From IMG/VR virus record IMGVR_UViG_3300043410_001892, positions 308,174-372,173 of that record: 64,000 nucleotides of DNA; one strand, written 5' to 3'. Below are positions 11,737 to 64,000 of the stretch, piece after piece; the first letter of the stretch is position 1, and each line of letters starts with the position of its first letter. The translations under genes and the position numbers were made by a program. The notes under the pieces were generated by a model. It searched no databases. It was not told the DNA's origin and saw only the letters and a list, made by a program, of their open reading frames with translations.

Positions 11737-12264
11737 CTATGTAGTGATTAGTTTTGTTTTGTATTTAGTGTAAAAACCTTTCACTGTTAAAGAAACCTTT
11801 TGAACACCGGTAATTCCAATTCTTTTAGCAGCTTCTTTTGAAAGATCAATGATTCTGCCTTTTAAAAATGGTCCGCGGTCATTGATTCTAACTAGTACTG
11901 ATTTATGATTTACATCATTAGTTACTTCAACAACTGTGCCAAATGGTAATGTCTTATGTGCTGCAGTTAGTTCTTTTGGACTAAAATATTCTCCGTTTGC
12001 AGTTTTTGGTCTGCGACGATATCTTGGTCCTGATTCATAACCATACCAGCTTGCATAACCATTCATGCTATCTCCAGATGCTAACGGATTTCTGTGTTTA
12101 TGTTTTCTGTGTTTTTTGAATAATGCAATTTTATGTTTCATTTTTGCATTGTGTTTAACTTGTTCGACATGTTTTTCGTTGACATGTTTTTGTGACGCAT
12201 CTACTGGAAATGCGGTTGAAATTAATGAGAGGGCAAGAAGCCCTATTGGTAGTGAATTTTTCAT
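11737..12264 (-). CDS. rlpA: RlpA-family septal ring lytic transglycosylase (DPBB) with N-terminal signal peptide
   Basis: G.ASWYG...TANGE.F....[16 protein letters not shown]...[19 protein letters not shown]; start [12 protein letters not shown] with AAAGGAG RBS. Confidence 0.9.
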
Positions 12265-15128: not shown

Positions 15129-15323
15129 TTACGGCTTTTCTTCAAAAATCTGTCTGAGCGCATTCTTCATGGCCTCCTGTTCTTTTTCAGTCCATAAACC
15201 AGCTGATGGAGTTTTTCCTTCTTTAACCATTGCGCAAGGGCATACAGGATCATTGCCCTGCGGTCCCATGCATGCACAAATCTTAAGATCTTTGTATTCG
15301 TTATAAGGCTGGTAGTTCGTCAT
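15129..15323 (-). CDS. Small Cys-rich hypothetical protein
   Basis: CACMGP...P.CPC.M motif; overlaps the nrdB end. Confidence 0.55.
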   Translation of the reverse strand: MTNYQPYNEYKDLKICACMGPQGNDPVCPCAMVKEGKTPSAGLWTEKEQEAMKNALRQIFEEKP

Positions 15324-16395
15324 AATTTAATTCATCCGACATTACACCTACTACATAGTTGACACTTTCAGATTCTTGTAAAGCAGTTTGCTTTTTACTC
15401 GGATCACTATGCTTGTTAAACCATGGAATAGGAGTTGATTTAGGTGCATGTTCACGATACTTAATGCCAACTTCTTTTAAAGCGTGTGCAGCAGTATAGT
15501 CAACAAATTCTTTTAAGATGTTAGCGTTAAGTCCAATTACTGGTCCTTTTAAGAATAAGTAATCTGCCCATTCTTTTTCTTCGCGAATAACATCTAAGTA
15601 CATATTATACACTAATTCCTCGCATTCTGCTTTAATTTCGGCAAAACGCGGGTCATCTTTTATTACCAAATTAATCATGTAAGCAGTCCACTCTTTATGC
15701 AATAATTCATCTTGTAATATAAGTGCAATAATGTTACCATTACCGATGAACAGTTTATTTTCAACCATTGCTAAACTGGTAGCAAACGACACCATAAATC
15801 TTAATGATTCTAATGCGTAGCTGGCATGTAGCGCAAGCCAGATAGCTTTAATGTGTTCTCTTTCAGGTACATAAATGCTAAGTTCGCATTTGCAATTGAT
15901 TATATGTAATTCATTATAGTATCTACCAACACTACTTGCCATATCAACAATTGGTTTAGTATCATGGATAGTGTTAAATATCTCTTTTGGGACATTATAG
16001 ATATTACGAATAATATGACTATAACTACGACTATGAATATTTGATTCAAAAAAGCCCCAGTTAAGCATTAGTAGTTCTGCTTCAGGTACACTAACTACAG
16101 GTGTAAACACTTGTGTAGGACCTCGTCCTTGTAAACTGTCTAATGCAGTTTGTCTTAATAAGTTACTAGTGAAAATATGTTTAACTGCATCACTAGCATC
16201 TTTAAAATCATTAGCGTCTTTGCTTAATGAGATTTCTTCTGGAGTCCAAAAGAAACCTCTAGCAGTTTGCTCATATTTTTGAATTTTTGGATAGCGAACT
16301 TCTTCAAATCTTTGAATGGTAACTGTCCCGTCTAGAAACAATTTTCTAGACAGGTAGTTAGTTTGTTCGCTTAGATTATATTGTTCATCACTCAT
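15301..16395 (-). CDS. nrdB: Ribonucleotide reductase class Ia beta subunit
   Basis: FFWTPEEI, LDSLQGR, E..HSRSY, LE..RF.VSFA, DE.LH, QE.E...Y. Confidence 0.95.
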   Translation of the reverse strand: MSDEQYNLSEQTNYLSRKLFLDGTVTIQRFEEVRYPKIQKYEQTARGFFWTPEEISLSKDANDFKDASDAVKHIFTSNLLRQTALDSLQGRGPTQVFTPVVSVPEAELLMLNWGFFESNIHSRSYSHIIRNIYNVPKEIFNTIHDTKPIVDMASSVGRYYNELHIINCKCELSIYVPEREHIKAIWLALHASYALESLRFMVSFATSLAMVENKLFIGNGNIIALILQDELLHKEWTAYMINLVIKDDPRFAEIKAECEELVYNMYLDVIREEKEWADYLFLKGPVIGLNANILKEFVDYTAAHALKEVGIKYREHAPKSTPIPWFNKHSDPSKKQTALQESESVNYVVGVMSDELNYDELPAL

Positions 16396-16397
16396 TA

Positions 16398-16655
16398 TTA
16401 CACCGATTCGTTAGGTACAACTGTAAATTCAGGAGGAGGAATTTCATCTCCTGAATAATTTATACATAACCCTTGTTCTTTATCGATATATACACTTAAA
16501 ACATCATCTGCACTTAACGCGGCTAAAACCATAGGTTTAGCTTCTTCTTCAATTATAAAATTATCAGGAACTCCCCATAATTTTAATTTTTCATTAAGGC
16601 GTTCATTTAACAGTTCGTCGTTAGTGAATTCTTTAATTGCAACTTCGTTAGTCAT
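16398..16655 (-). CDS. Hypothetical protein
   Basis: 85-aa ORF in operon. Confidence 0.6.
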   Translation of the reverse strand: MTNEVAIKEFTNDELLNERLNEKLKLWGVPDNFIIEEEAKPMVLAALSADDVLSVYIDKEQGLCINYSGDEIPPPEFTVVPNESV

Positions 16656-16839
16656 TTATAATCCTTATTGTACTTGTTTCATCTAATGCATACCACGCAC
16701 TTTCAAAATATTTCGTTATGTCATTTAATGTTTCTTCTGGCATACGCATTACCCATTCGTTTGTTTCAGCATCATGTTTAAGTGGTAATTCGATTTTTAA
16801 ATTATGCCGCATTGATACTACTAATTTTTTATCTTTCAT
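16648..16839 (-). CDS. Hypothetical protein
   Basis: Start MKDKKLVV overlapping the SOD stop. Confidence 0.55.
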   Translation of the reverse strand: MKDKKLVVSMRHNLKIELPLKHDAETNEWVMRMPEETLNDITKYFESAWYALDETSTIRIIND

Positions 16840-17384
16840 AACGTTTTGTTTACCTGTTCCCAGTTTATTATTTTCCATTGATTTTCTAAATACTTTTGTT
16901 TATCTGATTGATAGTCTAGTGCCCATGCATGTTCCCACCAGTCAACTAATAATACAATGTCTTTTTTAATAGCATGGTTAGTTATAGTTTTAATTTGTCC
17001 ATTTTTAGCAAGATAGACCCAACCACTTCCTTGTATGCCCATTGCTACTTTTAAAAACTCTTCTTTGAATTTATCAAAGGTTTTATAATGGGTTTCAATG
17101 AGCTCAAGTGCCTTGCCAACTGGCTTGTTTAGTTTACCAGTTGACTCTTGATATTGCTGGAACAAAATGTTGTGTAAAAATACACCTGCTTCGTTAAACA
17201 CCGGATCACCTTCACCTGCATTATACCGTTTTGCGTATGTTTTAGCAAGATGTTCGTAATGGTAATCTAATGTTTCTTTTGATATAGCAGGACTTAACTC
17301 ATTCATCCCGTATGGCAGGGCATCTATTTTTAAAGATGCCGGTCTACCTTCAGTTATAAATTGTTTAATGAAGCTATAACTCAT
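16836..17384 (-). CDS. sod: Fe/Mn superoxide dismutase
   Basis: LPY...L.P.IS.ETL.YHY..H, HN..F, GSGW..L, D.WEHA; ATGA-coupled to the nrdA stop. Confidence 0.9.
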   Translation of the reverse strand: MSYSFIKQFITEGRPASLKIDALPYGMNELSPAISKETLDYHYEHLAKTYAKRYNAGEGDPVFNEAGVFLHNILFQQYQESTGKLNKPVGKALELIETHYKTFDKFKEEFLKVAMGIQGSGWVYLAKNGQIKTITNHAIKKDIVLLVDWWEHAWALDYQSDKQKYLENQWKIINWEQVNKTL

Positions 17385-19696
17385 AGCTTGCAAGCCTCGC
17401 ATGATTCATCTTCTTCTTCAATAATTGCACTAGGTAAATCAATTTCAACTTCTTCTTTGCTACCAGTTTTGTCAATTAAACTATAGTAGAATGTCTTAAT
17501 ACCCCAATAGTGCCCTAACATTAAGTTTTTAGCAATTAGTGTAGTTGGTATCTTTCTACCTGGAAAGTGTTTTGGAGAATAGAATGTATCAGTACTAATT
17601 GATTGATCAATGTATGCAGCTAATACAGCCGCAGTTTTCAAATAACCAACACAATCAGTTTGTTCCCACATAAGTTGATATTTGTTTTTCAATTTATGAT
17701 ACTCAGGAACTACTTGTGTAAGTGAACCAGCTTTTGATTCTTTAGTTTGAATAAGCTGCATAGGCATTGCAATACCATTTGTAGAATTGATCACAACACT
17801 TGAACTTTCAACTGGAGCAATAGCACCTACTGTAGCATTTCTTACACCATATTGTTTCATTTCAGTACGTAGTGTTTCCCATGGTAATTCTGGAGTAAAG
17901 TCAGTTAAGTCATTAGCACCGTCTGCACGTAATTCCCATGGAAAGATACCTTGGCCATAACGTGTTTCTGCACTATGTCTGCAAGGACCACGTTCTTTAG
18001 CTAATTCAACTGACATTTCAGTTAAGTAGAAAGTTTGGTGTTCAATCCAGCTTTTAACTTCTGCCAATGCATCAGCATCTCCGTATTTAAAGTTACGTTT
18101 TGCATGCCAATATGCTAAGTTAGTAATACCAATACCTAACGGTCGTATTTCTTGATTGCTTTCATAACTATGTACAGACAAGAAATCTTGATAATCTAAG
18201 ATATTGTTTAAGCTGCGATGTAAAATACGGCAAGCTCTGCGCATATCTTCTGGATTACGGAATGCTCCCCAGTTCATAGACCCCAACGTACACAACGCTA
18301 TGCGTCCACTTGGATCATCCAATCGTTTAAATGCTTTTGTGGGGAGCAATATTTCTTGACATAAGTTACTTTGGTAAATTGTGTGAAAGTACGGATCAAA
18401 TGGTCCTTGCTTGATTACATTGTCAATGAACACTAAGTAAATACGGCCAGTGTCAGTGCGTTCTTTTAAGAGACCACCTTTGAACACCTCCTCGGCTGAC
18501 ATAGTTTTCTTCCGTAGCGTTTTATCTTGCTCATACTGGGTGTAGAGCTTTTCGAACAATAATGTATCAGTGTAAAACGCTTCATATAAGTCTGGTACTT
18601 CATTAGGATCAAAAAATGTTATGTTTTCTTTGTTTTTGAACCTACGCCAAAAGAATGCGTTTAATACAACGCTGTAATCTAAATGACGCACTCGTGTTTC
18701 ATCTGTTCCTTGATTGTTTTTAAGTACGATCAAGTCATCAAATTGATAATGCCAAATTGGAAATGTTATAGTTGCGCTTGCATTGCGTATGCCGCCTTGC
18801 GAGCAACTGCGTAAATCTCCAAACCATTTCTTTAAAAATGGAATCATTCCAGTATGCATGATTTCGCCACCGCGAATTGGGGAGCCCAAGGGGCGTAGTC
18901 GACCAATTTCTAATCCAATCCCCGCACGTTTACTGGCATATTTTGCCATCATTTCACCGCTTGCAAAAATAGAGTCAAGATCATCATCACTACGAATAAG
19001 TACGCAGGAGCTAAACTGTTTAGTTGGTGTGCCAAGCCCAGCAAGAACGGGTGTAGCAAGAGTAAATAAGCCATCGGATGCAGCATTATAATATTCCTTA
19101 ATATATTTCATTCTCGCAGTAGCAGGTTCTTCTTTATGGAAGACTGTTGCAGCAGCAATCATATATCTTACTTGTGGAGTTTCGTAAATATCTTTAGTAG
19201 CACGATTGCGTACTAAGTATTTTTCGATAAGTTGTTCAATAGCAGCATATGAGTAGGTTTCATCTTTTGAATGATCAAGCATGTCATTCATTTTATTCCA
19301 TTCTTCAACAGAATACCAATCAAGTAATTCTGAAGTGTATAGTCCAACTTCAATATTCTTTTTAACTATTGTATATAGATGTGGTGGTTCATATTGACCA
19401 TAGACATCTTTTCGTAGCATGGACAACCTTTGTTTACCTGCTACATATTGATAATTTGTATGACCTACATCAGGATTAGCGTCAACATCAATTAAGTTAA
19501 CAATTGCCCTTAATGTAATTTCGTCAATTTCTTGTGTAGTAATATTATCATAAAATTGTGGTTGGCTTTTGATTTCGATCATTGATTGACTAACATCTGC
19601 AATTCCACTGCAAATCTTTGCAATTTGAGCTTGCCATTTTTCGATTGTAAGATCGGCACAAATTCCGTTGCGTTTAATAACTTTTATTTTATTCAT
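17381..19696 (-). CDS. nrdA: Ribonucleotide reductase class Ia alpha subunit (with ATP cone)
   Basis: VIKRNG ATP cone, TPVLAG, FSSCVL, SCSQGGIR, SNLCQEI, APVESSS, KT.YY, C-terminal CEACKL. Confidence 0.96.
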   Translation of the reverse strand: MNKIKVIKRNGICADLTIEKWQAQIAKICSGIADVSQSMIEIKSQPQFYDNITTQEIDEITLRAIVNLIDVDANPDVGHTNYQYVAGKQRLSMLRKDVYGQYEPPHLYTIVKKNIEVGLYTSELLDWYSVEEWNKMNDMLDHSKDETYSYAAIEQLIEKYLVRNRATKDIYETPQVRYMIAAATVFHKEEPATARMKYIKEYYNAASDGLFTLATPVLAGLGTPTKQFSSCVLIRSDDDLDSIFASGEMMAKYASKRAGIGLEIGRLRPLGSPIRGGEIMHTGMIPFLKKWFGDLRSCSQGGIRNASATITFPIWHYQFDDLIVLKNNQGTDETRVRHLDYSVVLNAFFWRRFKNKENITFFDPNEVPDLYEAFYTDTLLFEKLYTQYEQDKTLRKKTMSAEEVFKGGLLKERTDTGRIYLVFIDNVIKQGPFDPYFHTIYQSNLCQEILLPTKAFKRLDDPSGRIALCTLGSMNWGAFRNPEDMRRACRILHRSLNNILDYQDFLSVHSYESNQEIRPLGIGITNLAYWHAKRNFKYGDADALAEVKSWIEHQTFYLTEMSVELAKERGPCRHSAETRYGQGIFPWELRADGANDLTDFTPELPWETLRTEMKQYGVRNATVGAIAPVESSSVVINSTNGIAMPMQLIQTKESKAGSLTQVVPEYHKLKNKYQLMWEQTDCVGYLKTAAVLAAYIDQSISTDTFYSPKHFPGRKIPTTLIAKNLMLGHYWGIKTFYYSLIDKTGSKEEVEIDLPSAIIEEEDESCEACKL

Positions 19697-27312: not shown

Positions 27313-29610
27313 TTATCTAGCTATCTCAGTAATTCTCATCCATAGGGCAGTTGATGAGTTTGTAATAGTTATATTATCATCTGCACTATCTCTACGAACC
27401 CCAACAGTAATAGACTTTGCAGTTACGTTTGTGTTTGTGTATCTACCAGTTAAGGGAAATAGAGCACCTGTTCTAAAACTTTCGTTGCTCTTTGTCATCT
27501 GCCGACTGTAGGTAATTTCAGCTCCATCTACTTTAATACGAGAAAAATAGCTGTCTGTACCGGCACCGCCTGTATCAGATGCTGCTGAATATGCAGCCAC
27601 GTGAACATGAATAATTAGATAACTTGAACTACTCGATGGCGTATAACTATAGGTGATAAAATCTGTATCACTATTGCTAGTAGCTACTGTTGTCGTATTA
27701 ACAGTAAATTCTGTATTGCTTAACATAGTATCTTTAATAATCTGCCCAGCTCTATAAGAACCTGGTAGTACAAACCCGGCGGTCGCTAGATTACCAGTGG
27801 TATCAATCGCTGCTTTTACCGATCCACCTGTTTCGTTTAGATTATATACAAATCGTAGTAACTGTCCACTTAGAACACTAAATTGTCCATTCCAACTATC
27901 AAGCGCAAAGTTAGTATTATTGGCATAATACAGTAAGAGACCAGGTGTGTCTGTACTTCCGTTATCTAAAGTAATATCACCGGTTGCATATCCAGTCTTA
28001 GTAAATGTATTAGATCCAAAGTTATTAAGACCGGTAGTTCTTAAACCTGCTAATGTACCAACACTTGTTAAACTACTATTAACAACATTGTTTCCTAATG
28101 TCGTACCAGACAACGCAGACGTGCCTGCAATATAATATGCCATTCCAGCATCAATATCAATGTTATTTCCAACAAAGATATTAGCGGATACACCTAGTGT
28201 CCCTGTTATATTAACGGTATTAGATATGTGATTATATGTTGAACCACCAGTGCCGCGAGTAAATTGAATATAGCCATTGGAAGTAAGTGCAGATAGAGTT
28301 CCAACACTTGTTAAACTTGAACCAACTACGGTTGAGTTTAATGATGTTCCAGTTAAGGTCGTCGCTGCTGCGGTAACAGTTTTACTTTCACCTAATGATA
28401 TTTGTGTACCATTAATATAGAATAAGCTATTGGCTAATTTAGCATTACTAATACTACCAGCTAACATTGTATTTGTTACGGTTCCTGTATCTGTAGTATA
28501 AACACCATTAGTTACAGTTGCAGCATTGCCAGATGATGTAATGTAACCACTATCATTTGTAAACGCGCTTAACGTTGTAGGTTTATTAGTTAGATTATTA
28601 TAATCAGTAGTACCAGCTGGTCCTGTAAGTCCTTGTGGACCTTGATCTCCAGTATCACCCTTAGGTCCCTGTATGCCCTGAATTCCTTGTGCACCAGTTG
28701 CCCCAGTTGCCCCAGTGTCACCTGTAAGTCCTTGTGGTCCAGTTAACCCAGTATCACCCTTAGGTCCCTGTATGCCTTGAATTCCTTGTGGTCCAGTTGC
28801 TCCAGTATCACCTTTAAGTCCTTGTGCACCAGTTGCTCCAGTATCACCTTTAAGTCCTTGTGGTCCAGTTAAACCAGTATCGCCCTTAGGTCCCTGTATG
28901 CCTTGTGCACCAGTTGCACCAGTTGCACCAGTATCGCCTTTAAGTCCTTGTATGCCTTGTATACCTTGCGGGCCAGTTGCCCCAGTTGCGCCTGTATCAC
29001 CTTTGAGTCCTTGCGGTCCAGTTGCCCCAGTTGCGCCTGTAGCACCGGTTGGGCCAACAATAGGTCCAATGTAATCCCATTGTCCAAGTGTTAAATTCCA
29101 AAACCATAGTGCACCGTTTACATGTGGTAATATGCCAGTAGTAACAATCCAACCGTGACCTGCATAATCATTTAAATTAGTCGGAACTGCAGGTAGTGCT
29201 GATTCAGTTGCAACTGTTCCTTGGAGCTGTACACTAATACCTTGTGCACCAGTAGCTCCTGTGTCACCTTTTGGTCCTTGCGGTCCAGTTGCGCCTGTAG
29301 CACCGGTTGCACCAGTAACGCCTGCAGGACCTTGAATTCCTTGTACACCTTGTGGTCCTGCTGGGACAGCAGCCCATAATACAGTAGTACCATTAGTTTG
29401 TAAAAAATTACCACTTTGATTGGCTTGATCTGGATAACTAGCAGTACCACTACCGCTACCACTAATAATTATACCACCAGGAGTTATACCGTCTGATACT
29501 CTAATAGTATTACTTTCACTATCATACCAAAGACGATTTAATTGCCCAATACGTGTATTACCGTCGTTATAATCTCGATAACTAGTAAAAAAATCTTGTG
29601 TGAATGCCAC
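27313..29610 (-). CDS. Collagen-containing tail fibre protein
   Basis: Two Gly-X-Y blocks, SSLTSVGTL repeats; N-term LWYD....RVSDG.TPGG shared with 9002..11056. Confidence 0.85.
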
Positions 29611-57079: not shown

Positions 57080-57274
57080 ATGATAGAATTTTCATTTGAC
57101 GAACAAAATGGTGTTATTCATCGTACTAATGGTCCAGCTTGGATAAATCCAGGATATGGACATACTCCACTTGGATACTATTGGCATTGGCGGCTATTTG
57201 GCGTTAGACATCGTTATTATGGACCGCAAAATCGGGATGGTGATTGGTGGTTACATGGGAAGAGAGTAAAATGA
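57080..57274 (+). CDS. Array B gene 1 (HRxNGPA/HRYYGP)
   Basis: HRTNGPA...W.LFG.RHRYYGP...W.LHGKRVK. Confidence 0.8.
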   Translation: MIEFSFDEQNGVIHRTNGPAWINPGYGHTPLGYYWHWRLFGVRHRYYGPQNRDGDWWLHGKRVK

Positions 57275-57474
57275 TTGAAATACGAAACACTGCTAACAAT
57301 GGATTTGTATATCTTTTAGATGGTAATTGGCATCGATCTAATGGCCCTGCTAGGGTATGGGCAAATGGAGAATGGGGATGGTATTTAACTGATCGCCAAC
57401 ATCGCTATTATGGTCCGCAAGCAAACAATGAGTGGTGGATACATGGGGAGTGTATAAAATATGGATTCGACTAA
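57271..57474 (+). CDS. Array B gene 2
   Basis: HRSNGPA...HRYYGP. Confidence 0.8.
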   Translation: MIEIRNTANNGFVYLLDGNWHRSNGPARVWANGEWGWYLTDRQHRYYGPQANNEWWIHGECIKYGFD

Positions 57475-57682
57475 GTCACAACGATATTTATACAGTTATT
57501 TAACACCTAATGATACAGTTGAGTACAAATTGCATACTGGTGGGTTTCATCGATGTGATGGACCTGCACTAACACGATATGAAAGATGGGCATGGTTTTT
57601 ATATGATCAACATCATCGGTATTATGGTCCGCAGCACTCACATTATCCTAATTGGATGATTCATGGGAAGAGGGTTAAATGA
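57461..57682 (+). CDS. Array B gene 3
   Basis: HRCDGPA...HRYYGP. Confidence 0.8.
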   Translation: MDSTKSQRYLYSYLTPNDTVEYKLHTGGFHRCDGPALTRYERWAWFLYDQHHRYYGPQHSHYPNWMIHGKRVK

Positions 57683-57879
57683 TTAAACAAACTAAAAACG
57701 ATCATAGTATTAGGTTTACTAAAGATGGTAAGTTGCATTGTGCAAATGGTCCAACAGTATCATGGAATGATGGTTCATGGTCCTGGTATTTAGATGGCTA
57801 TCCTCATCGTTATTATGGACCACAAAAATCTTATGTGTTATATCGTAACTGGTATATTCACGGGATTGAAATTAAATGA
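57679..57879 (+). CDS. Array B gene 4
   Basis: HCANGP...HRYYGP. Confidence 0.8.
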   Translation: MIKQTKNDHSIRFTKDGKLHCANGPTVSWNDGSWSWYLDGYPHRYYGPQKSYVLYRNWYIHGIEIK

Positions 57880-58076
57880 TTATAAGAATTGAAGAAGAAC
57901 ATAGTATATGCTATCGATTAGAAAATGGTGTGTGCCATCGACCTAATGGACCTGCTGTAGAGTTTAAGGCTGACAAGACAGGCTATTGGTTCTTGTTTGG
58001 TAAACGACATAGATACTATGGTCCGGCATCTCATGCTAATAATTGGTTTTGGATACATGACAAGAGAGTTAAATGA
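57876..58076 (+). CDS. Array B gene 5
   Basis: HRPNGPA...HRYYGP. Confidence 0.8.
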   Translation: MIIRIEEEHSICYRLENGVCHRPNGPAVEFKADKTGYWFLFGKRHRYYGPASHANNWFWIHDKRVK

Positions 58077-58267
58077 TTACAAAAACTAAGGAAGGCAGTA
58101 TTGTTGTATACCGATTAAATGACATGTGGCATCGATCTAGTGGTCCTGCTTATGAGTTTCCTAATGGTAAAGGCTTTTGGGCATTATTTGGTAAACGACA
58201 TAGATACTATGGTCCGGCATCTCCCTATAGTAACATATATTATCTACATGACAGGTTGGTTAAATGA
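58073..58267 (+). CDS. Array B gene 6
   Basis: HRSSGPA...HRYYGP. Confidence 0.8.
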   Translation: MITKTKEGSIVVYRLNDMWHRSSGPAYEFPNGKGFWALFGKRHRYYGPASPYSNIYYLHDRLVK

Positions 58268-58491
58268 TAGAAAGATTTGAAGACATTGAATGTGTTCGTT
58301 ACCGATTAAATGGTGTGCCTCATCGAACTAATGGACCTGCGTTTGAATGGCTAAATGGTGACTGGAGTTGGGCATTGCATGGGAAAATACATCGTTATTA
58401 CGGACTTGCAGGTAGCAATGCAATGATAGATATTTTTCATGAATCGCGCAAAATAAAGTTTTGGGTATTGCACGGTGAGAGAGTTAGATGA
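58264..58491 (+). CDS. Array B gene 7
   Basis: HRTNGPA...HRYYG. Confidence 0.8.
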   Translation: MIERFEDIECVRYRLNGVPHRTNGPAFEWLNGDWSWALHGKIHRYYGLAGSNAMIDIFHESRKIKFWVLHGERVR

Positions 58492-58712
58492 TTGATCGAA
58501 TTGAGGAAAACGATCGTGTTTGTTATCGATTAAATGGGGTGCCTCACCGTCCTAATGGACCTGCGTTTGAATGGCCAAATGGTGACTGGAGTTGGTCGTT
58601 GTATGGGAAAATACATCGCTATTACGGACCTGCGGCTTGCAATGAAACGATAGATAAGTATCATGGCGGCAATTCAAAGTTTTGGGTATTGCACGGTGAG
58701 GGAGTTAGATGA
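58488..58712 (+). CDS. Array B gene 8 (recent duplicate of gene 7)
   Basis: HRPNGPA...HRYYGP. Confidence 0.8.
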   Translation: MIDRIEENDRVCYRLNGVPHRPNGPAFEWPNGDWSWSLYGKIHRYYGPAACNETIDKYHGGNSKFWVLHGEGVR

Positions 58713-58948
58713 TTGAAGAAAGACAGTGTGTAGCATCAGTTGTTGGTACATACACAGAATATGTAAAAGACAATAAACCTCATCGACCCAATGGCCCGGC
58801 AAGGATCTATAATGATGGTGATGCTTACTGGTGGTTATATGGGAATAGACATAGATACTATGGACCTCAAACATCTAACCAAGAACGATCAATTTGGCGA
58901 GTACACGACCGGGAAATGAAATATGAAGTCCACTGGATTGAAGAATAA
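58709..58948 (+). CDS. Array B gene 9
   Basis: HRPNGPA...HRYYGP. Confidence 0.8.
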   Translation: MIEERQCVASVVGTYTEYVKDNKPHRPNGPARIYNDGDAYWWLYGNRHRYYGPQTSNQERSIWRVHDREMKYEVHWIEE

Positions 58949-59117
58949 TAAGTATTATGAGCATCGAGAAGATGACAAGTTACACTGCACTAATGGTCCG
59001 GCATGTGCTGCCGGACCAAACAGTTGGTTATGGTGTTTAAATGATCAACCTCATAGATATTACGGTCCTTACCATTCTGACGGATGTTGGTGTCTTCACG
59101 GGAAAAGAGTTAAATGA
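58923..59117 (+). CDS. Array B gene 10
   Basis: HCTNGPA...HRYYGP. Confidence 0.8.
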   Translation: MKSTGLKNNKYYEHREDDKLHCTNGPACAAGPNSWLWCLNDQPHRYYGPYHSDGCWCLHGKRVK

Positions 59118-59323
59118 CTAAGCCACACCGATATGTAAGCACTTATTGTGAAACTGATGATACAGTTATTTATAGAGTGCTCAATGATTATCATCGATGT
59201 GATGGACCTGCACTAATACAATATGACAAATGGGGATGGTTTTTGTTTAACAACTGGCACAGGTATTATGGAGAGGCTCGTAGTGCCGGTGATTGGTATA
59301 TTCACGGGAAATTAGTTAAATGA
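59114..59323 (+). CDS. Array B gene 11
   Basis: HRCDGPA...HRYYG. Confidence 0.8.
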   Translation: MTKPHRYVSTYCETDDTVIYRVLNDYHRCDGPALIQYDKWGWFLFNNWHRYYGEARSAGDWYIHGKLVK

Positions 59324-59511
59324 TAAAAAAAACAGATGGCGGATATTATTATGAATATCGATCAAATGGTAAGAGACATCAAGTCAATGGTCCTGCGTTA
59401 GTCTTTGTTACTGGTGAAAAATATTGGTTTTTATATGATCAATGGCATAGATATTATGGCTATCAATCTAACAAGAATCAATGGTGGTTACATGGGGAAA
59501 AAATTAAATGA
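59320..59511 (+). CDS. Array B gene 12
   Basis: HQVNGPA...HRYYG. Confidence 0.8.
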   Translation: MIKKTDGGYYYEYRSNGKRHQVNGPALVFVTGEKYWFLYDQWHRYYGYQSNKNQWWLHGEKIK

Positions 59512-59720
59512 TTGAACAATTTGAGTACCATAGTTGCACAGTATATTTAAAGGACGGCGAACCGCATCGTCCTAATGGACCAGCAAGGATATACCGTGAT
59601 GGATCTAAGTATTGGTGGTTATATGGGATTCGCCATCGATACTATGGACCACAATGTAAGGATATTTATGGAACAATTTGGAGAATACATGGCTTACTGA
59701 TAAAACATGAACACAAATAA
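59508..59720 (+). CDS. Array B gene 13
   Basis: HRPNGPA...HRYYGP. Confidence 0.8.
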   Translation: MIEQFEYHSCTVYLKDGEPHRPNGPARIYRDGSKYWWLYGIRHRYYGPQCKDIYGTIWRIHGLLIKHEHK

Positions 59721-59871
59721 CGATCTAACACATAAGACTAATGGCCCCGCTGTAACGTGTAGCAACGGTTATTGGTCATGGAGATTATTTAACAATTATC
59801 ACAGGTATTACGGTCCGGTAAATAGTAGAGGACGATGGTGTATTCATAACAAGTGGGTTAAATGGTTGTAA
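59707..59871 (+). CDS. Array B gene 14 (54 aa, not in track)
   Basis: MNTNNDLTHKTNGPAV...HRYYGP...WCIHNKWVKWL. Confidence 0.7.
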   Translation: MNTNNDLTHKTNGPAVTCSNGYWSWRLFNNYHRYYGPVNSRGRWCIHNKWVKWL

Positions 59872-59931: not shown

Positions 59932-60195
59932 ATGCCTAAATTAAAAAAACAAAAAGGGTTTTGGTATGCCCCTAAACCATATAAAGGAGTAATTGCTTTG
60001 AGAGATTTAATAAACATTGTCGAAGACAAAGAATGCCAGACACCTGGCGCAAATTATAGATTTGAAACAACTGATGATAGCGTAACATCAACTGTTACAT
60101 TACCATTCAAACTTAACTTAACAGAAGAACAGGTTAAGAAACTTGAAAACGAATTACACGATTCATTAGAACAAGTATTTAAACAATTTTTCTAG
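59932..60195 (+). CDS. Hypothetical protein
   Basis: Start MPKLKKQ after early promoter. Confidence 0.55.
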   Translation: MPKLKKQKGFWYAPKPYKGVIALRDLINIVEDKECQTPGANYRFETTDDSVTSTVTLPFKLNLTEEQVKKLENELHDSLEQVFKQFF

Positions 60196-60206
60196 GATAA
60201 CACACA

Positions 60207-60278
60207 ATGATACCTGGACCGCCTGCACCAAACACAATAAACTGGTTTTGTGTTAGACCAGTGAGGGATATTAAATGA
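60207..60278 (+). pseudogene. Vestigial array A member (23 aa)
   Basis: MIPGPPAPNTINWFCVRPVRDIK; keeps the CCAGTGAGGGATATTAAATGA junction. Confidence 0.6.
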
Positions 60279-60664
60279 CTATCGAAACTGCTAAAGAGTA
60301 TATCAAACACCGTGCAAGACCGCGATACACCAAATATTACGATGAAAGTGCAGTAGTTGAAACTACAATGCGATCTGGATGGATAGTGCATGATTTTAAA
60401 TTATCAGTTGAGCATAACCTCAACCTAATCCATGATGTAGCCCGTGCTTGGCTAACATCAACTCATGAGGAACGTATTGCCAACTGCAAGGCGACAACTT
60501 ACGACGAATGGTTGAAGAATCCTAAATCAGATTTTATTATGGTTCGTGATGGCCATAGAAGAGAAGTACAACGAGTAAATGATATTACTGAAATAGAAAA
60601 AACGCATACCTTTGAAGGTATGAGTACATTAGGCACTATGCCTATATTTCGCAAACAGGTTTAA
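60275..60664 (+). CDS. Hypothetical protein
   Basis: 129 aa, coupled to the vestigial ORF. Confidence 0.65.
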   Translation: MTIETAKEYIKHRARPRYTKYYDESAVVETTMRSGWIVHDFKLSVEHNLNLIHDVARAWLTSTHEERIANCKATTYDEWLKNPKSDFIMVRDGHRREVQRVNDITEIEKTHTFEGMSTLGTMPIFRKQV

Positions 60665-60732
60665 AAATCATTTGCAATCCAGCTTACACTTTGCTATAAT
60701 ATATTTTTTTAACGCACACATGAGGCAAACGC

Positions 60733-61263
60733 ATGGCACTGCTAAAATCTATGTCGCAACAAACTGTTCCAGTTCCAGTTACGGAACCAGTTACTGTATT
60801 TTCTCCATTTGGTAACAGTATAACAAATGGCATTCGCATTTCGACACATGTTAGGATTTCATTTAACACAGAAGATTTAACTCCGGTTAGCTTTTACAGT
60901 TTCTTTGCAGGTAATACATTGCCTTACCCTCATCAGCAAATGAGCTTTTCTGCGCGAGATGGCTATAAAGTAATGTACACATCAACTCCTAGTCCAGTAC
61001 ATAACATCGATGAAAATAGTTTACTTACTGTGGACAACATCATAGGTCCACATAAGATAACAGATGACATTTATGTTCATTTTAAAGATGGATATGATAT
61101 TCAAAGATCTCTAAATCTTGATATAAAAGATAGACGGCTAATAGCCTATATCCCCGATGCAAGTGGTAATAATACAGTCAGTTTAATACCACATGTCACG
61201 CGTGAAAATCTTGACGCATGGATTCGCGTGTTCTTAACATTCCGAACTTTAATAGAGGACTAA
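60733..61263 (+). CDS. Hypothetical protein
   Basis: MALLKSM; paralog of the next gene. Confidence 0.7.
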   Translation: MALLKSMSQQTVPVPVTEPVTVFSPFGNSITNGIRISTHVRISFNTEDLTPVSFYSFFAGNTLPYPHQQMSFSARDGYKVMYTSTPSPVHNIDENSLLTVDNIIGPHKITDDIYVHFKDGYDIQRSLNLDIKDRRLIAYIPDASGNNTVSLIPHVTRENLDAWIRVFLTFRTLIED

Positions 61264-61264
61264 T

Positions 61265-61786
61265 ATGTCAATTTTAAAATCAATGGTTAAACCTAGAACA
61301 ATTACTGTTGCAACTCCTCAACCAGTAGAAGATTCATATGATAAGAATACTATGCAGATTGCAGAAAATAAATGGATTCGTGCTTGTATCGATGACTTAG
61401 AAAAACCATCGTGCAATGTTAGAAGTGATGGGAACGACAGGGTATTATCGTGGGAGTTTCACGACTGGGACGACGATTACTATTCAGGTCCTGTTTGTAC
61501 AGTTGACTTTAGGAGCGGTCTTCCAGAGAAGTGCGGTGTGTTATCTTTTGATGAGGTGTTATCTTACAATGATGGAGGAGTCTACTATGTTCAGATAACA
61601 GAACCAGAATCATGTAAGAACTTAGAGGTTCAACTTACCCTTGCTGTAGATAGACGTACAGACGTATTGAGCATAGTACCTGACCCATATAATGGTGAAC
61701 GCATCTCTTTACTACATCTAGACAATCCTGCCGCACTTGATGCTTTGATTAGATCACTGATGGTTATTAGAAGTACGATCGTTTAA
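61265..61786 (+). CDS. Hypothetical protein
   Basis: MSILKSM; shares PD...SL......LDA.IR C-terminus. Confidence 0.7.
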   Translation: MSILKSMVKPRTITVATPQPVEDSYDKNTMQIAENKWIRACIDDLEKPSCNVRSDGNDRVLSWEFHDWDDDYYSGPVCTVDFRSGLPEKCGVLSFDEVLSYNDGGVYYVQITEPESCKNLEVQLTLAVDRRTDVLSIVPDPYNGERISLLHLDNPAALDALIRSLMVIRSTIV

Positions 61787-61814
61787 CAGCCACACTAAGT
61801 TGAAGAGGTATACG

Positions 61815-62627
61815 ATGGACACACTTGACCATTACGTGTTGCTAGGATTTCCTGTGCATCACAGTGAATCACCACGTATTCATGCGTTATTTGCAGAACA
61901 AACCGGGCAAAATATGAGTTATCTTGCGCAAGAAGTTAGGCCAGAAAATTTTATCGTTGCCGTCAATGAATTTTTTGAAAAAGGCGGCAAAGGCCTAAAC
62001 TGTACGCTACCACTCAAAGAATTGGCATGGGAATTTGCCACGAATAAAACGCCACGCGCCCAAGCGGCAAAAGCAGTCAATACACTGGTTTTGCAAGAAA
62101 ATGGGCAAATTTTAGGTGACAATACCGACGGCATTGGTTTAGTAACAGATTTGACAAACAATCACGGTGTCAATCTTGAAAATAAACGATTGCTTATTTT
62201 GGGAGCGGGTGGTGCTACACGCGGAATTTTATTGCCGCTACTTGATGAAAAGCCCAAAAGTATCACTATTGCTAATCGTACCGTTGAAAAAGCCATGCAA
62301 CTCGCTAATGAGTTTCAACAACACATTCATGCGTGTAGATTTGAGGCGTTAGAAAATCATCAATTCGATGTTATTTTAAACGCCACATCGGCCAGTTTGA
62401 GTGATGATTTGCCACCGCTACCAGAAAATATATTGGCTGAAAACGGCATTTGTTACGATTTAGCGTATAGCAATCAACCGACTGCGTTTGTGCGTTGGGG
62501 GATTGAGCAAAACGCCCATAAAAGCGTTGACGGCTTAGGCATGCTTGTTGAGCAAGCGGCAGAGGCTTTTTTTCTCTGGCGTGGCGTTCGTCCTAGCACA
62601 CAATTTTTATTACATGACATGAAGTAA
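61815..62627 (+). CDS. aroE: Shikimate dehydrogenase
   Basis: G.PV.HS.SP.IH, G.NCT.P.K, AVNT, GDNTDG.G, GAGGA, ANRT, NATS, YDL.Y, DGLGMLVEQAA. Confidence 0.95.
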   Translation: MDTLDHYVLLGFPVHHSESPRIHALFAEQTGQNMSYLAQEVRPENFIVAVNEFFEKGGKGLNCTLPLKELAWEFATNKTPRAQAAKAVNTLVLQENGQILGDNTDGIGLVTDLTNNHGVNLENKRLLILGAGGATRGILLPLLDEKPKSITIANRTVEKAMQLANEFQQHIHACRFEALENHQFDVILNATSASLSDDLPPLPENILAENGICYDLAYSNQPTAFVRWGIEQNAHKSVDGLGMLVEQAAEAFFLWRGVRPSTQFLLHDMK

Positions 62628-62697
62628 ATATCATTTGACAACCACACTAAATAATTGTATAATTGTTTTTTTACTTACACGCTATAGGAGCAAAAAA

Positions 62698-63069
62698 ATG
62701 TCTAAAACACTTAAAGAAACCTCACAAGCAGTTGCCAATGCTAACTTTGACGCAGCCAAAACTGCGGCAGTATTGTCAGCAGCTGGTATTGCTAACCGTC
62801 AAATTGTTAAGTTAGCAGCATCAAAAGCACCGCTAATGATGAGAGGTTACGTTGATACTGCATTTGGTAAGTTAGTTCTCGCTAACATCGCAGCACAAGG
62901 TTTAATGTATGCAAGACCAAACGATGCCAGAATCAACACCTTAGCAGAAGCTATGATGGTTACTGCTTATCAAGATGCAATTGGCGAGTTTGATATCGAT
63001 GGCATGATCGATGACTTCCTTAATACATCACAGATGAAAAAAGCATTAGCTAATTTGGAGACGGAGTAA
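62698..63069 (+). CDS. Hypothetical protein
   Basis: Start MSKTLKE, AGGAG RBS, consensus promoter at 62635. Confidence 0.7.
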   Translation: MSKTLKETSQAVANANFDAAKTAAVLSAAGIANRQIVKLAASKAPLMMRGYVDTAFGKLVLANIAAQGLMYARPNDARINTLAEAMMVTAYQDAIGEFDIDGMIDDFLNTSQMKKALANLETE

Positions 63070-63246
63070 AAACTTCCGTTTATAATAGCTTTGATAGCTT
63101 GGCTAACATCAACACTGCTGTTAGCATCTAATCCATATCCGGACTTACAAGGCTTGCTATGTCTTGTAATTACAATGACAGCAGTTGATATGGTTTCATC
63201 AACTATGGGGGAGTAATTCCCCCATTCACAGAATGGTGGTTACTTA

Positions 63247-63738
63247 ATGTTTAAGAAACACAGATCAGAACGCATCTCAGCATACTCTAACATGATTGCT
63301 GAATTGGCTATTGAGTTAGCTATGGACGATACAACAAAAGATGATGCAGTTAAATATGCAGCACGGTCTATGGGTAATATATTAGAGCGACTGATGCTAA
63401 GTCCTGAAGCGATTGAGCTACTTGACAATGACTTACAAACGAATGTAATTCCATTCTACACTCTCACAAAGTCAAAGAATGACGCTATCAGACGTGCTAA
63501 ACGAAAAGCTAAGAAAACAGACGATGACGAGTTTAATTTTGATTTAGACAAAATGAAAGCTGCTGTTGAGTCCGGACGTGTTTCAATTCCTAAAGAAGCC
63601 TTAACAAGTTTTGAAGCATTTGATAAATGGTTAAGTGAAGACACTGAACCTGTTATAAAAAAAGTTTGCGATCAAAAAGTAAATGGCAGTTGCCCATTAC
63701 ATAATCTACATTGTCAATATCCCGAATGTGAGAAATAA
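63247..63738 (+). CDS. Hypothetical protein
   Basis: C-term C....G.CPLHNLHC.YP.CE. Confidence 0.65.
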   Translation: MFKKHRSERISAYSNMIAELAIELAMDDTTKDDAVKYAARSMGNILERLMLSPEAIELLDNDLQTNVIPFYTLTKSKNDAIRRAKRKAKKTDDDEFNFDLDKMKAAVESGRVSIPKEALTSFEAFDKWLSEDTEPVIKKVCDQKVNGSCPLHNLHCQYPECEK

Positions 63739-63741
63739 ACA

Positions 63742-64000
63742 ATGATAACATTTTATCCCCGTAATATAGGAATGTGGCGTGAAGTATTTACATTTAATGA
63801 TATTACATTAAGTGTGAATAATATACAATCCAAAACATTTTATAACCGTGATGAATTGATTGAATTTTTAAAGCAACATAAAGTTAGATTAGATGATCCA
63901 AAATATCCCTTAGAATTCGATGGACCTTACGAACATCATGTCTTTGGTAATTGTGTTTATACCGTTATACAATGGTCCACTATTGGCTGGATTAAAGACG
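63742..64000 (+). CDS. Hypothetical protein, truncated by window end
   Basis: MITFYPRNIG... open to 64000. Confidence 0.55.
   Translation, partial: MITFYPRNIGMWREVFTFNDITLSVNNIQSKTFYNRDELIEFLKQHKVRLDDPKYPLEFDGPYEHHVFGNCVYTVIQWSTIGWIKD

What the first reader, a model, noticed from the sequence alone, without database searches (positions are those of the whole stretch)
61815..62627. Recently captured host aroE
Seen: an intact AroE whose body uses GCG/GCC/CGC/GGC/ACG codons and higher GC than flanking genes, inserted among early hypothetical genes. From memory it resembles gammaproteobacterial (Methylococcales-like) AroE; this is unverified. Inference: a recent host-to-phage transfer, a useful host marker, and an uncommon auxiliary gene for aromatic amino acid, folate and quinone precursors.
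Basis: partly seen in the sequence, partly recalled or inferred. Interest (0 to 1): 0.6.

Follow-up and report, generated by a model that had tools for sequence, protein, structure and literature searches.

The report
Host-derived aroE in methanotroph jumbo phage
A giant virus of methane-eating lake bacteria carries an intact copy of its host's shikimate dehydrogenase gene (aroE); it is a rare type of stolen metabolic gene and a good host marker, but it is older, more rearranged and more mosaic than a simple recent capture.

Summary
The ORF at 61815-62627 (+) is a real, intact AroE (270 aa; NCBIfam equivalog 354 bits; catalytic motifs present). The window is the last 64 kb of a complete 372-kb phage genome that also encodes pmoC, so it is a jumbo phage of methanotrophs. 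The codon claim holds: GCG+GCC make up 61% of Ala codons against 11% phage-wide, and GC3 (36%) is the highest of 140 long ORFs and equals the donor background. GC is only modestly above the neighbours.

The gene nests (98% support) in a narrow clade of freshwater Methylococcaceae MAGs, all with cbiA-aroE-gyrB-like context. The best bacterial alleles are 88-92% identical in nucleotides; the rest of the family is about 70% or less in protein.

"Recent capture" is only partly right:
- Diverged relatives (L027, L029) carry aroE at the same locus with the same 5' junction.
- A closer relative (L028, run X8) lacks it.
- The window copy is a derivative whose last 7 codons come from a phage ORF.
- Its 3' third is 97-100% identical to the other phage's allele, but its middle is closest to bacterial alleles (mosaic, p=3e-11).

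Both junctions are bridged by independent contigs. The physiological role is inferred, not shown.

The parts
61815..62627 (+). aroE ORF (270 aa plus stop), NADP-type shikimate dehydrogenase
   Evidence: Motifs: HSESP 16-20, NCTLPLK 62-68, DNTDG 102-106, GAGGATRG 130-137, NRT 154-156, Q247.
61815..62603 (+). Part of the ORF homologous to bacterial aroE (gene nt 1-789). No bacterial homology on either side of it.
   Evidence: blastn and alignments against L002, L007-L010 and L031/L032.
61869..62354 (+). Middle segment (gene nt 55-540). It is closest to bacterial alleles: 91% to L007 over the whole segment and 89-98% to L031/L032 in 90-nt windows. It is only 61-82% identical to the other phage allele (L027) in those windows.
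   Evidence: dS to L031 0.24; dS to L027 1.22.
62355..62603 (+). 3' third (gene nt 541-789). It is 97% identical overall to the aroE of related phage L027 (98-100% in the core) and about 90-92% to the best bacterial alleles. This is a recombination patch shared by the two phages.
   Evidence: dS win-L027 0.12 here.
62604..62627 (+). Chimeric C-terminal tail FLLHDMK plus stop. It derives from codons 73-79 of a phage ORF (orf79 of L028, which is the N-terminal 76 codons of orf175 of L027 plus DMK). It replaces the bacterial tail DVIDLLNAHR.
61797..61814 (+). 5' junction: 18 nt carrying the ribosome-binding site, homologous to the last bases of phage orf175 that precede aroE in L027 and L029.
61783..61803 (+). 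Truncated remnant of the promoter repeat (degenerate -35, -10 deleted) directly after the stop of the upstream gene.
   Evidence: Alignments; this reading is an inference from similarity to the repeat at 62628-62678.
60671..60700 (+). Sigma-70-like promoter (TTGCAA, 17 nt spacer, TATAAT, with TG) of a repeat family. It is the likely promoter of the three-gene unit 60733-62627, which includes aroE.
   Evidence: (family D8). No plus-strand terminator-like site lies between it and aroE.
60733..61786 (+). Two upstream hypothetical genes (176 and 173 aa, weak paralogues), conserved in relatives with and without aroE.
62635..62678 (+). Perfect sigma-70 consensus promoter (TTGACA, 17 nt spacer, TATAAT) plus a T-run. 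This repeat element starts the next gene and is shared with L027 and L028.
62698..63069 (+). Downstream gene with a DUF7566 C-terminal domain. It is the right-hand neighbour in all three locus architectures.

Best explanation
The ORF is a shikimate dehydrogenase gene taken from the host. It lies in a hyperplastic, promoter-repeat-rich region of small early-type genes in a complete 372-kb jumbo phage. That phage also carries pmoC and infects a narrow lineage of freshwater Methylococcaceae methanotrophs with assemblies of about 2.1-2.7 Mb.

Shown:
(1) The donor clade is identified.
(2) The gene occurs at the same locus in diverged relatives. There it is complete, keeps the bacterial C-terminus, follows a phage gene (orf175) and is flanked by a perfect 12-nt direct repeat. 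This is the primary capture form.
(3) The window copy is a secondary derivative. orf175 is deleted except for its last 18 nt. The last 10 bacterial codons are replaced by 7 codons of a phage ORF remnant.
(4) The gene is a mosaic. Its 3' third is shared almost identically with the other phage, while its middle is closest to bacterial alleles. So at least one homologous exchange within aroE, phage-host or phage-phage, followed the first capture.
(5) A closer relative lacks aroE, so the gene is polymorphic in the phage population.
(6) Both phage alleles are intact, keep the catalytic and NADP-binding motifs, and evolve under purifying selection.

Inferred:
- aroE is transcribed by host RNA polymerase from the sigma-70-like promoter at about 60.7 kb, together with two upstream genes.
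- It acts as an NADPH-dependent 3-dehydroshikimate reductase.
- It tops up one step of the host's chorismate pathway during infection. The phage has no other shikimate-pathway enzyme.
- Which downstream product matters (aromatic amino acids, folate for the phage ThyX, or quinones) is unknown.
For: Phage identity:
- The record is a 372,173-bp virus genome with direct terminal repeats, rated 100% complete. It has tail-fibre genes, ribonucleotide reductase and pmoC.

AroE identity:
-.

Donor:
-.

Homology limits:
- Bacterial homology starts at the ATG and ends at 62603.

Related loci:
- L027 and L029 have orf175 followed by aroE; L028 has orf79 in place of aroE.
- Run X8 holds a contig at depth 48 that joins 61780 to 62603, the same break points as L028.

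Mosaic structure:
- Informative sites in nt 55-540: win=L007 but not L027, 105; win=L027 but not L007, 16; L027=L007 but not win, 19.
- The same three classes in nt 541-789: 5, 21 and 2. Fisher p=3e-11.
- dS between the window and L027 is 1.22 in the middle and 0.12 in the 3' third.

Selection:
- On the window's own branch (codons 19-263) there are 18 synonymous and 6 nonsynonymous changes, omega about 0.09.
- On the L027 branch omega is about 0.17; a bacterial control gives 0.06.

Codon use stays donor-like.

Junctions:
- In run X1 contigs bridge both junctions at 100% identity (61430-62422 and 62574-63753), at depths close to the flanks.
- L028 runs across the record's end into its start, which confirms circular continuity.

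Pathway context:
- The phage has no shikimate kinase, type II dehydroquinase, EPSP synthase, chorismate synthase, ThyA or DHFR. ThyX is present.
Against: - No expression data exist; no RNA run holds the stretch.
- No enzyme assay has been done.
- The near-invariant Lys of the H-S-K-S-P substrate loop (K in 130 of 134 homologues) is Glu here and Arg in L027. Nine of the first 18 residues are phage-specific and the C-terminal helix is replaced. Altered or lost activity cannot be excluded.
- Loss of aroE in a close relative (L028, X8) shows that the gene is dispensable.
- The direction of the intragenic exchange is not resolved: either the window's middle or L027's middle was the part replaced.
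- The window-specific 3' junction is seen only in runs X1 and X2, which are one sample and possibly the source sample.
- AroE is not classically the rate-limiting step of the pathway (own knowledge).
Confidence: 0.72

Rival explanations
1. Simple recent capture: this phage alone picked up aroE directly from its current host very recently, in one event.
For: - Codon use and GC3 equal the donor background and are not ameliorated.
- The closest overall homologues are bacterial, not phage.
- The nearest relative in flank identity, L028, lacks the gene.
Against: - The best bacterial allele is only 92% nt identical, with dS about 0.33.
- L027 and L029 have flank genes only 76-80% nt identical to the window, yet they carry aroE at the same site with a homologous 5' junction and shared derived N-terminal residues.
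- The window copy lacks the bacterial 3' end that L027 retains. It instead carries remnants of orf175 and orf79, so it derives from a phage-borne form.
- The 3' third is 97-100% identical to the other phage's allele.
Confidence: 0.08
2. Two or more independent captures of aroE at the same hot spot in related phages, rather than one capture followed by recombination.
For: - In the middle segment the two phage alleles sit with different bacteria: the window with L007, L008 and L031, and L027 with L010 at 94/93 support.
- The locus is clearly recombination-prone.
Against: - The two alleles share 18 nt upstream of the ATG.
- They share derived residues in the first 31 codons (V9L, I/M10L, I14V, A/E31G).
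- They share a near-identical 3' third that differs by about 8-10% from all sampled bacteria.
Confidence: 0.1
3. aroE is a neutral passenger gene with no benefit to the phage. It is kept only because it arrived or was refreshed recently, and it is on its way to loss.
For: - Presence and absence vary among close relatives.
- There is no partner pathway gene in the phage.
- dN/dS against bacteria is about twice the bacterial background.
- The conserved Lys is replaced and both termini are altered.
Against: - The ORF is intact in at least two diverged phages.
- The long L027 branch has 58 synonymous and 37 nonsynonymous changes (omega 0.17), and the window branch has omega 0.09, with every catalytic and cofactor motif kept.
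- The frame was preserved through a 3' fusion that supplies an in-frame stop after 7 codons.
Confidence: 0.12
4. Assembly chimera or bacterial contamination joined to the end of the phage contig.
For: - The gene lies 1.4 kb from the end of the record.
- Its composition is donor-like.
Against: - The record closes on an 83-bp terminal repeat, and contig L028 from another sample runs across that end into the record's start.
- Logan contigs of run X1 bridge both junctions without mismatch, at depths like the flanks.
- Independent JGI and ENA assemblies (L027, L029) place aroE between the same phage genes.
- Bacterial homology stops inside the ORF, which ends in phage-derived codons.
Confidence: 0.02

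Closest known systems
Bacterial AroE, NADP-dependent shikimate 5-dehydrogenase (for example P. putida 4OMU, E. coli 1NYT), and specifically the AroE of freshwater Methylococcaceae MAGs (loci L007, L008, L031, L032)
   Same: - Same length class and three-domain architecture.
- Scores above the equivalog HMM cut-off.
- Catalytic Lys/Asp, the S-x-S, N, T and Q substrate residues, the glycine loop and the NRT motif are all present.
- 88-90% aa identity to the MAG proteins.
   Different: - It is encoded on a phage without the bacterial cbiA and gyrB-like neighbours.
- The first 18 residues are heavily substituted.
- The conserved Lys of H-S-K-S-P is Glu.
- The last 10 residues are replaced by 7 phage-derived residues.
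pmoC-phages: large freshwater phages carrying a host-derived pMMO subunit C (Chen et al. 2020, PMC7674155)
   Same: - A jumbo freshwater phage with a pmoC that is 94% aa identical to Methylococcaceae PmoC.
- The host is predicted from AMG similarity, as in that paper.
   Different: [quoted passage not shown]
- None of 20 other pmoC-bearing IMG/VR records has a Shikimate_dh_N domain, although most of them are fragments.
- aroE here is closer to host alleles (up to 92% nt) than pmoC is (82% nt).
Cyanophage psbA and other host-like AMGs that show intragenic phage-host recombination (own knowledge: Zeidner et al. 2005; Sullivan et al. 2006)
   Same: - A host-derived metabolic gene under purifying selection.
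- Patchy within-gene similarity to host and to other phage alleles, which implies repeated homologous exchange.
   Different: - The pathway differs (shikimate rather than photosynthesis).
- The gene is rare and polymorphic rather than near-universal.
- Codon use is not ameliorated.
- Expression has not been shown.
Modular shuffling of small early genes flanked by repeated early promoters in T4-type hyperplastic regions (own knowledge: Arbiol, Comeau and Krisch 2010)
   Same: - Small genes lie behind repeated sigma-70-like promoter elements.
- Three alternative architectures in relatives have break points at or in these repeats and at short repeats.
   Different: - No stem-loop partner of the promoter repeat was demonstrated here.
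- Whether this phage is related to T4-type phages was not tested.
aroE and aroQ listed among gut-phage AMGs by bulk annotation (PMC12180181)
   Same: Shikimate dehydrogenase annotated on viral contigs.
   Different: That report is a catalogue entry, with no locus, junction or phylogenetic validation. Here the phage context, the capture site and the donor are resolved.

Membership tests
AroE, shikimate dehydrogenase (NADP+), EC 1.1.1.25 | Score above the curated equivalog HMM cut-offs | tested here: met
   NF001310 scores 354 bits against a cut-off of 221. TIGR00507 scores 261 bits against 200.
AroE, shikimate dehydrogenase (NADP+), EC 1.1.1.25 | N-terminal substrate domain, Rossmann NADP domain and C-terminal SDH_C helix | tested here: met
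   PF08501, PF01488 and PF18317 all score above their cut-offs. The protein aligns over residues 4-268 to solved AroE structures. The last 7 residues are not bacterial.
AroE, shikimate dehydrogenase (NADP+), EC 1.1.1.25 | Catalytic Lys/Asp pair and substrate-binding Ser-x-Ser, Asn, Thr and Gln (E. coli S14, S16, N59, T61, K65, N86, D102, Q244; numbering from own knowledge) | tested here: met
   S17, S19, N62, T64, K68, N89, D105 and Q247 are present, by motif position and alignment to 4OMU. Deviation: the residue between the two serines is Glu, whereas it is Lys in 130 of 134 homologues.
AroE, shikimate dehydrogenase (NADP+), EC 1.1.1.25 | NADP(H) binding: glycine-rich loop and the N-R-T motif | tested here: met
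   GAGGATRG at 130-137 and NRT at 154-156.
AroE, shikimate dehydrogenase (NADP+), EC 1.1.1.25 | Catalytic activity on 3-dehydroshikimate | not testable with these tools
   This needs an enzyme assay or a complementation test.
Phage auxiliary metabolic gene (AMG) | Lies inside a bona fide phage genome with phage genes on both sides, and is not an assembly artefact | tested here: met
   The record is a complete 372-kb virus genome. Flanks are shared with phage contigs L027-L029. Contigs span both junctions. Continuity holds across the record's end.
Phage auxiliary metabolic gene (AMG) | Cellular origin shown by phylogeny | tested here: met
   The gene nests in a Methylococcaceae clade with SH-aLRT 98 (protein tree) and 96/97 (DNA tree of the middle segment).
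Phage auxiliary metabolic gene (AMG) | Expressed during infection and altering host metabolism | not tested
   No RNA run holds the stretch. The promoter context is consensus-level only.
Recent horizontal transfer | Near-identity to a donor allele (above about 95-98% nt) | tested here: not met
   The best alleles are 92.1% (L031, L032) and 88% (L007, L002). dS is 0.33 overall and 0.24 in the middle segment.
Recent horizontal transfer | Donor-like, unameliorated codon usage | tested here: met
   GC3 is 36.1%, against 36.0% in the donor background and 20.7% in the phage. The codon log-likelihood ratio is +3 SD.
Recent horizontal transfer | Absent from the syntenic site of relatives | tested here: inconclusive
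   It is absent in L028 and in the main X8 variant. It is present in the more distant L027 and L029.
pmoC-phage (Chen et al. 2020) | A pmoC gene on a large phage genome without pmoA or pmoB beside it | tested here: inconclusive
   pmoC was found at G000:C1:249671-250387 with 404 bits. The neighbouring ORFs were listed but not annotated. pmoA and pmoB were not searched for.

The most novel reading that the evidence does not exclude
aroE in this phage lineage behaves like psbA in cyanophages. On this reading it is a host gene kept under selection and repeatedly re-patched by homologous recombination with the current host's allele. It would be functionally coupled to the phage's pmoC, for example by sustaining chorismate-derived quinone or aromatic supply so that methane oxidation keeps running in infected cells. 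The replaced Lys in the substrate loop and the new termini might give the phage enzyme altered regulation, such as escape from product inhibition.
Probability: 0.15. Interest if true: 0.7.

Novelty: new member of a known kind. Interest (0 to 1): 0.5.

Why it matters
- It adds a validated shikimate-pathway enzyme to the short list of metabolic genes carried by phages of methanotrophs, next to pmoC.
- It gives a host marker that resolves to a narrow Methylococcaceae lineage, more sharply than pmoC does.
- The locus offers three natural architectures (primary capture, rearranged derivative, gene-less form) plus an intragenic mosaic. Together they document step by step how a jumbo phage acquires, reshapes, exchanges and loses a host gene.
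- If the enzyme is active, it points to chorismate-derived metabolites as a limiting resource during infection of methane oxidisers.

Tried and rejected
Searches that found nothing useful:
- The megablast search of INPHARED with window 60000-64000 found nothing.
- The protein search of INPHARED found only matches of 42% or less. The clearest cases are multi-hundred-kb Salmonella whole-genome-shotgun contigs filed as phage.
- INPHARED holds no pmoC either, so it is uninformative about pmoC-phages.
- IMG/VR pattern scans with AroE and with both flank proteins found no relatives. Relatives were reached instead through the word search with the upstream protein and contig look-ups.
- A strict promoter-repeat pattern matched only once in the window. 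The looser repeat family came from the repeat finder.
- A DNA search of five pmoC-phage records for the aroE locus hit only the promoter repeat. Those fragments do not cover the locus.

Unresolved:
- In run X8, low-depth (4-8x) aroE-like contigs stop at 62603 or run into non-phage sequence. One is 98% identical over 62109-62603.
- These may be host alleles or another phage form. The contigs could not be fetched.

Rejected ideas:
- A frameshift as the cause of the novel C-terminus. The nucleotide homology simply ends at 62603.
- An alternative TTG start at 61800. The ATG form is the one on record and it aligns with its homologues.

Not run because unnecessary:
- The large representative protein search.
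- Structure prediction.
- Complex prediction.

The stretch laid on the runs was 3,401 bases long.

Full report
**What the window is.**
- The window is bases 308174-372173 of a 372,173-bp IMG/VR virus record with direct terminal repeats, rated complete. The exact end repeat is 83 bp and the genome is 35.5% GC.
- The window holds collagen-like tail-fibre genes, a virion structural protein and a class Ia ribonucleotide reductase on the minus strand. From about 41 kb onward it holds dozens of small plus-strand ORFs.
- Outside the window the genome encodes PmoC (Pfam AmoC, 404 bits). It is therefore a jumbo phage of methanotrophs of the kind described by Chen et al. 2020 (PMC7674155).

**The observation.**
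- The ORF 61815-62627 (+) is intact, has an AGAGG ribosome-binding site, and encodes a 270-aa AroE. It matches the NCBIfam equivalogs, all three Pfam domains, and solved AroE structures at E=7e-80.
- The catalytic Lys/Asp pair, the substrate residues, the glycine loop and the NRT motif are all in place.
- GC is 42.7%, against 36.4-40.9% in the five neighbours and 35.5% genome-wide. That is higher, but only modestly.
- The codon signal is strong:
  - GCG+GCC are 61% of Ala codons, against 11% phage-wide (p=8e-10).
  - GC3 is 36.1%, against 20.7% for the phage and 36.0% for the donor background.
  - This is the highest GC3 among the 140 ORFs of 200 aa or more.
  - The donor/phage codon log-likelihood ratio lies 3 SD above the phage mean.

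**The donor.**
- The word search returned bacterial proteins only. A top tier at 81-88% is followed by named Methylococcaceae, Methylococcales and Methylobacter proteins at 64-70%.
- The top hits lie on contigs with housekeeping context: ilv genes, ubiA, cbiA-type amidase, aroE, then a gyrB-type gene.
- The genome scan found MAGs labelled Methylococcaceae or proteobacterium from freshwater at 86-90%. Their assemblies are about 2.1-2.7 Mb.
- A metagenome scan with a phage-specific 23-mer found two more bacterial contigs, L031 and L032. They are collinear with L007 over 8 kb, and their aroE is 92.1% identical to the window over nt 43-789.
- In a 92-row protein tree the phage protein nests in a 7-row clade of these MAG proteins (SH-aLRT 98), on a longer end branch.
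- In 121 species genomes of the donor's GTDB family only two reach 85-89%; the next is 70%.
- The phage PmoC is 94% aa but only 82% nt identical to the PmoC of the same MAGs. aroE is therefore the sharper host marker.

**Junctions.**
- Nucleotide homology to bacteria begins at the ATG and ends exactly at 62603, which is 24 nt before the phage stop. Neither flank has any bacterial homology.
- In run X1 Logan contigs cover 61430-62422 and 62574-63753 with no mismatch, at depths like the flanks.
- A contig from another sample (L028) runs from the aroE region across the record's end into its start. Chimeric assembly is excluded.

**Relatives and the history of the locus.** Homologues of the upstream 173-aa protein led to three phage contigs.
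- L027 (JGI, 39 kb) and L029 (ENA) have flank genes about 76-80% nt identical to the window. Both have the order upstream gene, promoter repeat, orf175, aroE, and L027 continues with promoter repeat and the DUF7566 gene.
- In L027 aroE keeps the bacterial C-terminus and stop. It is bracketed by a perfect 12-nt direct repeat, one copy 8 nt before the ATG and one directly after the stop. This looks like the primary insertion, at the end of orf175.
- L028 (Logan) has flanks 91-96% identical to the window and lacks aroE. In its place sits orf79, which is the first 76 codons of orf175 followed by three codons and a stop.
- The window breaks from L028 at 61780 and 62603. Those are the same joints seen at depth 48 in run X8.
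- The window's 18 nt before the ATG match the end of orf175. Its last seven codons plus stop match codons 73-79 of orf79. A truncated promoter repeat follows the upstream gene's stop.
- The window form is therefore a rearranged derivative of a phage-borne aroE, not a fresh insertion.
- Loose ends in runs X3 and X5 match the L027-type allele. X5 also shows the gene-less joint, and X1 holds a second, diverged strain. All forms therefore coexist in lakes sampled by different studies.

**Mosaic structure.**

| Segment (gene nt) | Window vs L027 | Window vs L031 | Window vs L007 |
|---|---|---|---|
| 55-540, 90-nt windows | 61-82% | 89-98% | 88-96% |
| about 600-790 | 98-100% | about 90-92% | about 88-91% |

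- Over the whole middle segment the window is 91% identical to L007.
- Informative sites switch between the two segments (Fisher p=3e-11). Segment trees place the window's middle with L007, L008 and L002, L027's middle on a long branch with L010, and the two phage 3' thirds together.
- Synonymous divergence between the two phage alleles is 1.22 in the middle and 0.12 in the 3' third.
- Together with the shared 5' junction and the shared derived N-terminal residues, this requires at least one homologous exchange inside aroE after the first capture. Which allele was overwritten is not resolved.

**Selection and function.**
- On the window's own branch (codons 19-263) there are 18 synonymous and 6 nonsynonymous changes, giving omega about 0.09.
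- On the long L027 branch there are 58 and 37 (omega 0.17). A bacterial control gives 0.06.
- Phage-specific residues are concentrated in the first 18 residues and in the new tail.
- The near-invariant Lys of the H-S-K-S-P loop is Glu here and Arg in L027.
- The phage has no shikimate kinase, type II dehydroquinase, EPSP synthase or chorismate synthase. It does have ThyX and ribonucleotide reductase.
- No plus-strand terminator-like site separates aroE from the sigma-70-like promoter at 60671-60700. A perfect consensus promoter follows aroE.
- The most likely working model is an inference. Early transcription by host polymerase would yield an active NADPH-dependent 3-dehydroshikimate reductase that supplements one host step towards chorismate.

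**Comparison and novelty.**
- The protein is a member of the AroE family by every sequence criterion tested.
- As a phage gene it fits the AMG concept, and its mosaic history resembles cyanophage psbA (own knowledge).
- aroE has been listed among gut-phage AMGs by bulk annotation (PMC12180181). It was not reported for pmoC-phages.
- It was absent from 20 other pmoC-bearing IMG/VR records, four of which are at least 98% complete.
- I rate it a new member of a known kind, of moderate interest.

**Limits.**
- There are no expression data.
- The reads tool gave contigs only, not raw reads.
- The window-specific 3' junction is confirmed only in one sample.
- Some low-depth aroE-like contigs in run X8 remain unassigned.

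Noticed in passing
window 57100-59871 (+): A tandem array of at least 11 small paralogous genes (about 54-79 aa). They share an H-R-x-N-G-P-A motif and a second H-R-Y-Y-G-P motif, and the genes overlap by ATGA start/stop. The one member tested has no Pfam hit. Similar small genes occur in L027 (weak DNA matches).
   Followed up: partly
G000:C1:249671-250387 (-), locus L020, outside the window: Phage-encoded pmoC (AmoC family, 404 bits). It is 94% aa and 82% nt identical to the PmoC of the same Methylococcaceae MAGs that hold the closest aroE. 137 pmoC-bearing stretches exist in IMG/VR, one with an identical protein on a 171.6-kb fragment (L033).
   Followed up: partly
window residues 16-20 of AroE (61860-61874); L027 aroE: The Lys of the H-S-K-S-P substrate loop is K in 130 of 134 homologues held. 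It is replaced in both phage alleles, by Glu in the window and Arg in L027.
   Followed up: partly
window 55990, 56234, 59879, 60672 and 62635 (+): Repeated sigma-70-like promoter elements (TTGCAA or TTGACA, 17 nt spacer, TATAAT, then a T-run) precede small genes. Contig depth spikes about fourfold at 60614-60727 in run X1, as expected of a multi-copy element. Rearrangement break points lie in or beside these repeats.
   Followed up: partly
L027:11087-11098 and 11920-11931: A perfect 12-nt direct repeat brackets aroE in the related phage. The bacterial sequence upstream of aroE contains a similar 9-10-mer, which suggests microhomology-mediated capture.
   Followed up: partly
window 15301-19696 (-): Class Ia ribonucleotide reductase small and large subunits. 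ThyX lies elsewhere in the genome (G000:C1:176059-176649). ThyA and DHFR were not found.
   Followed up: partly
window 7795-11056 and 27313-29610 (-): Collagen-like repeat tail-fibre proteins. The gene at 9002-11056 has 51% GC driven by codon positions 1 and 2, with GC3 only 18%. It is the second most GC-rich ORF of the genome.
   Followed up: no
G000:C1:46000-54500, outside the window: A cluster of about 15 small ORFs with GC of 43-59% and GC3 up to 60%, far above the phage mean. It could be a second foreign or RNA-gene-rich island. It was not examined.
   Followed up: no
run X1 over window 61459-62329 and 62696-63753: A second, diverged strain (contig depth about 124-135) coexists with the window-type strain in the same sample and carries a different aroE allele. 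This gives an opportunity for phage-phage recombination.
   Followed up: no
L002:10703-11590; L027:6634-6978; L029:1751-2083: Lcl_C (PF07603) domain genes occur both on the host-type bacterial contig near aroE and in the related phage contigs. An IS605-type OrfB/TnpB gene lies 3.4 kb downstream of the bacterial aroE in L002.
   Followed up: no
window 60733-61263 and 61265-61786 (+): The two genes upstream of aroE are weak paralogues (23% identity, E=6e-4). Only six proteins in the 5.8-billion-protein collection match the second one, and all come from related phage contigs.
   Followed up: partly
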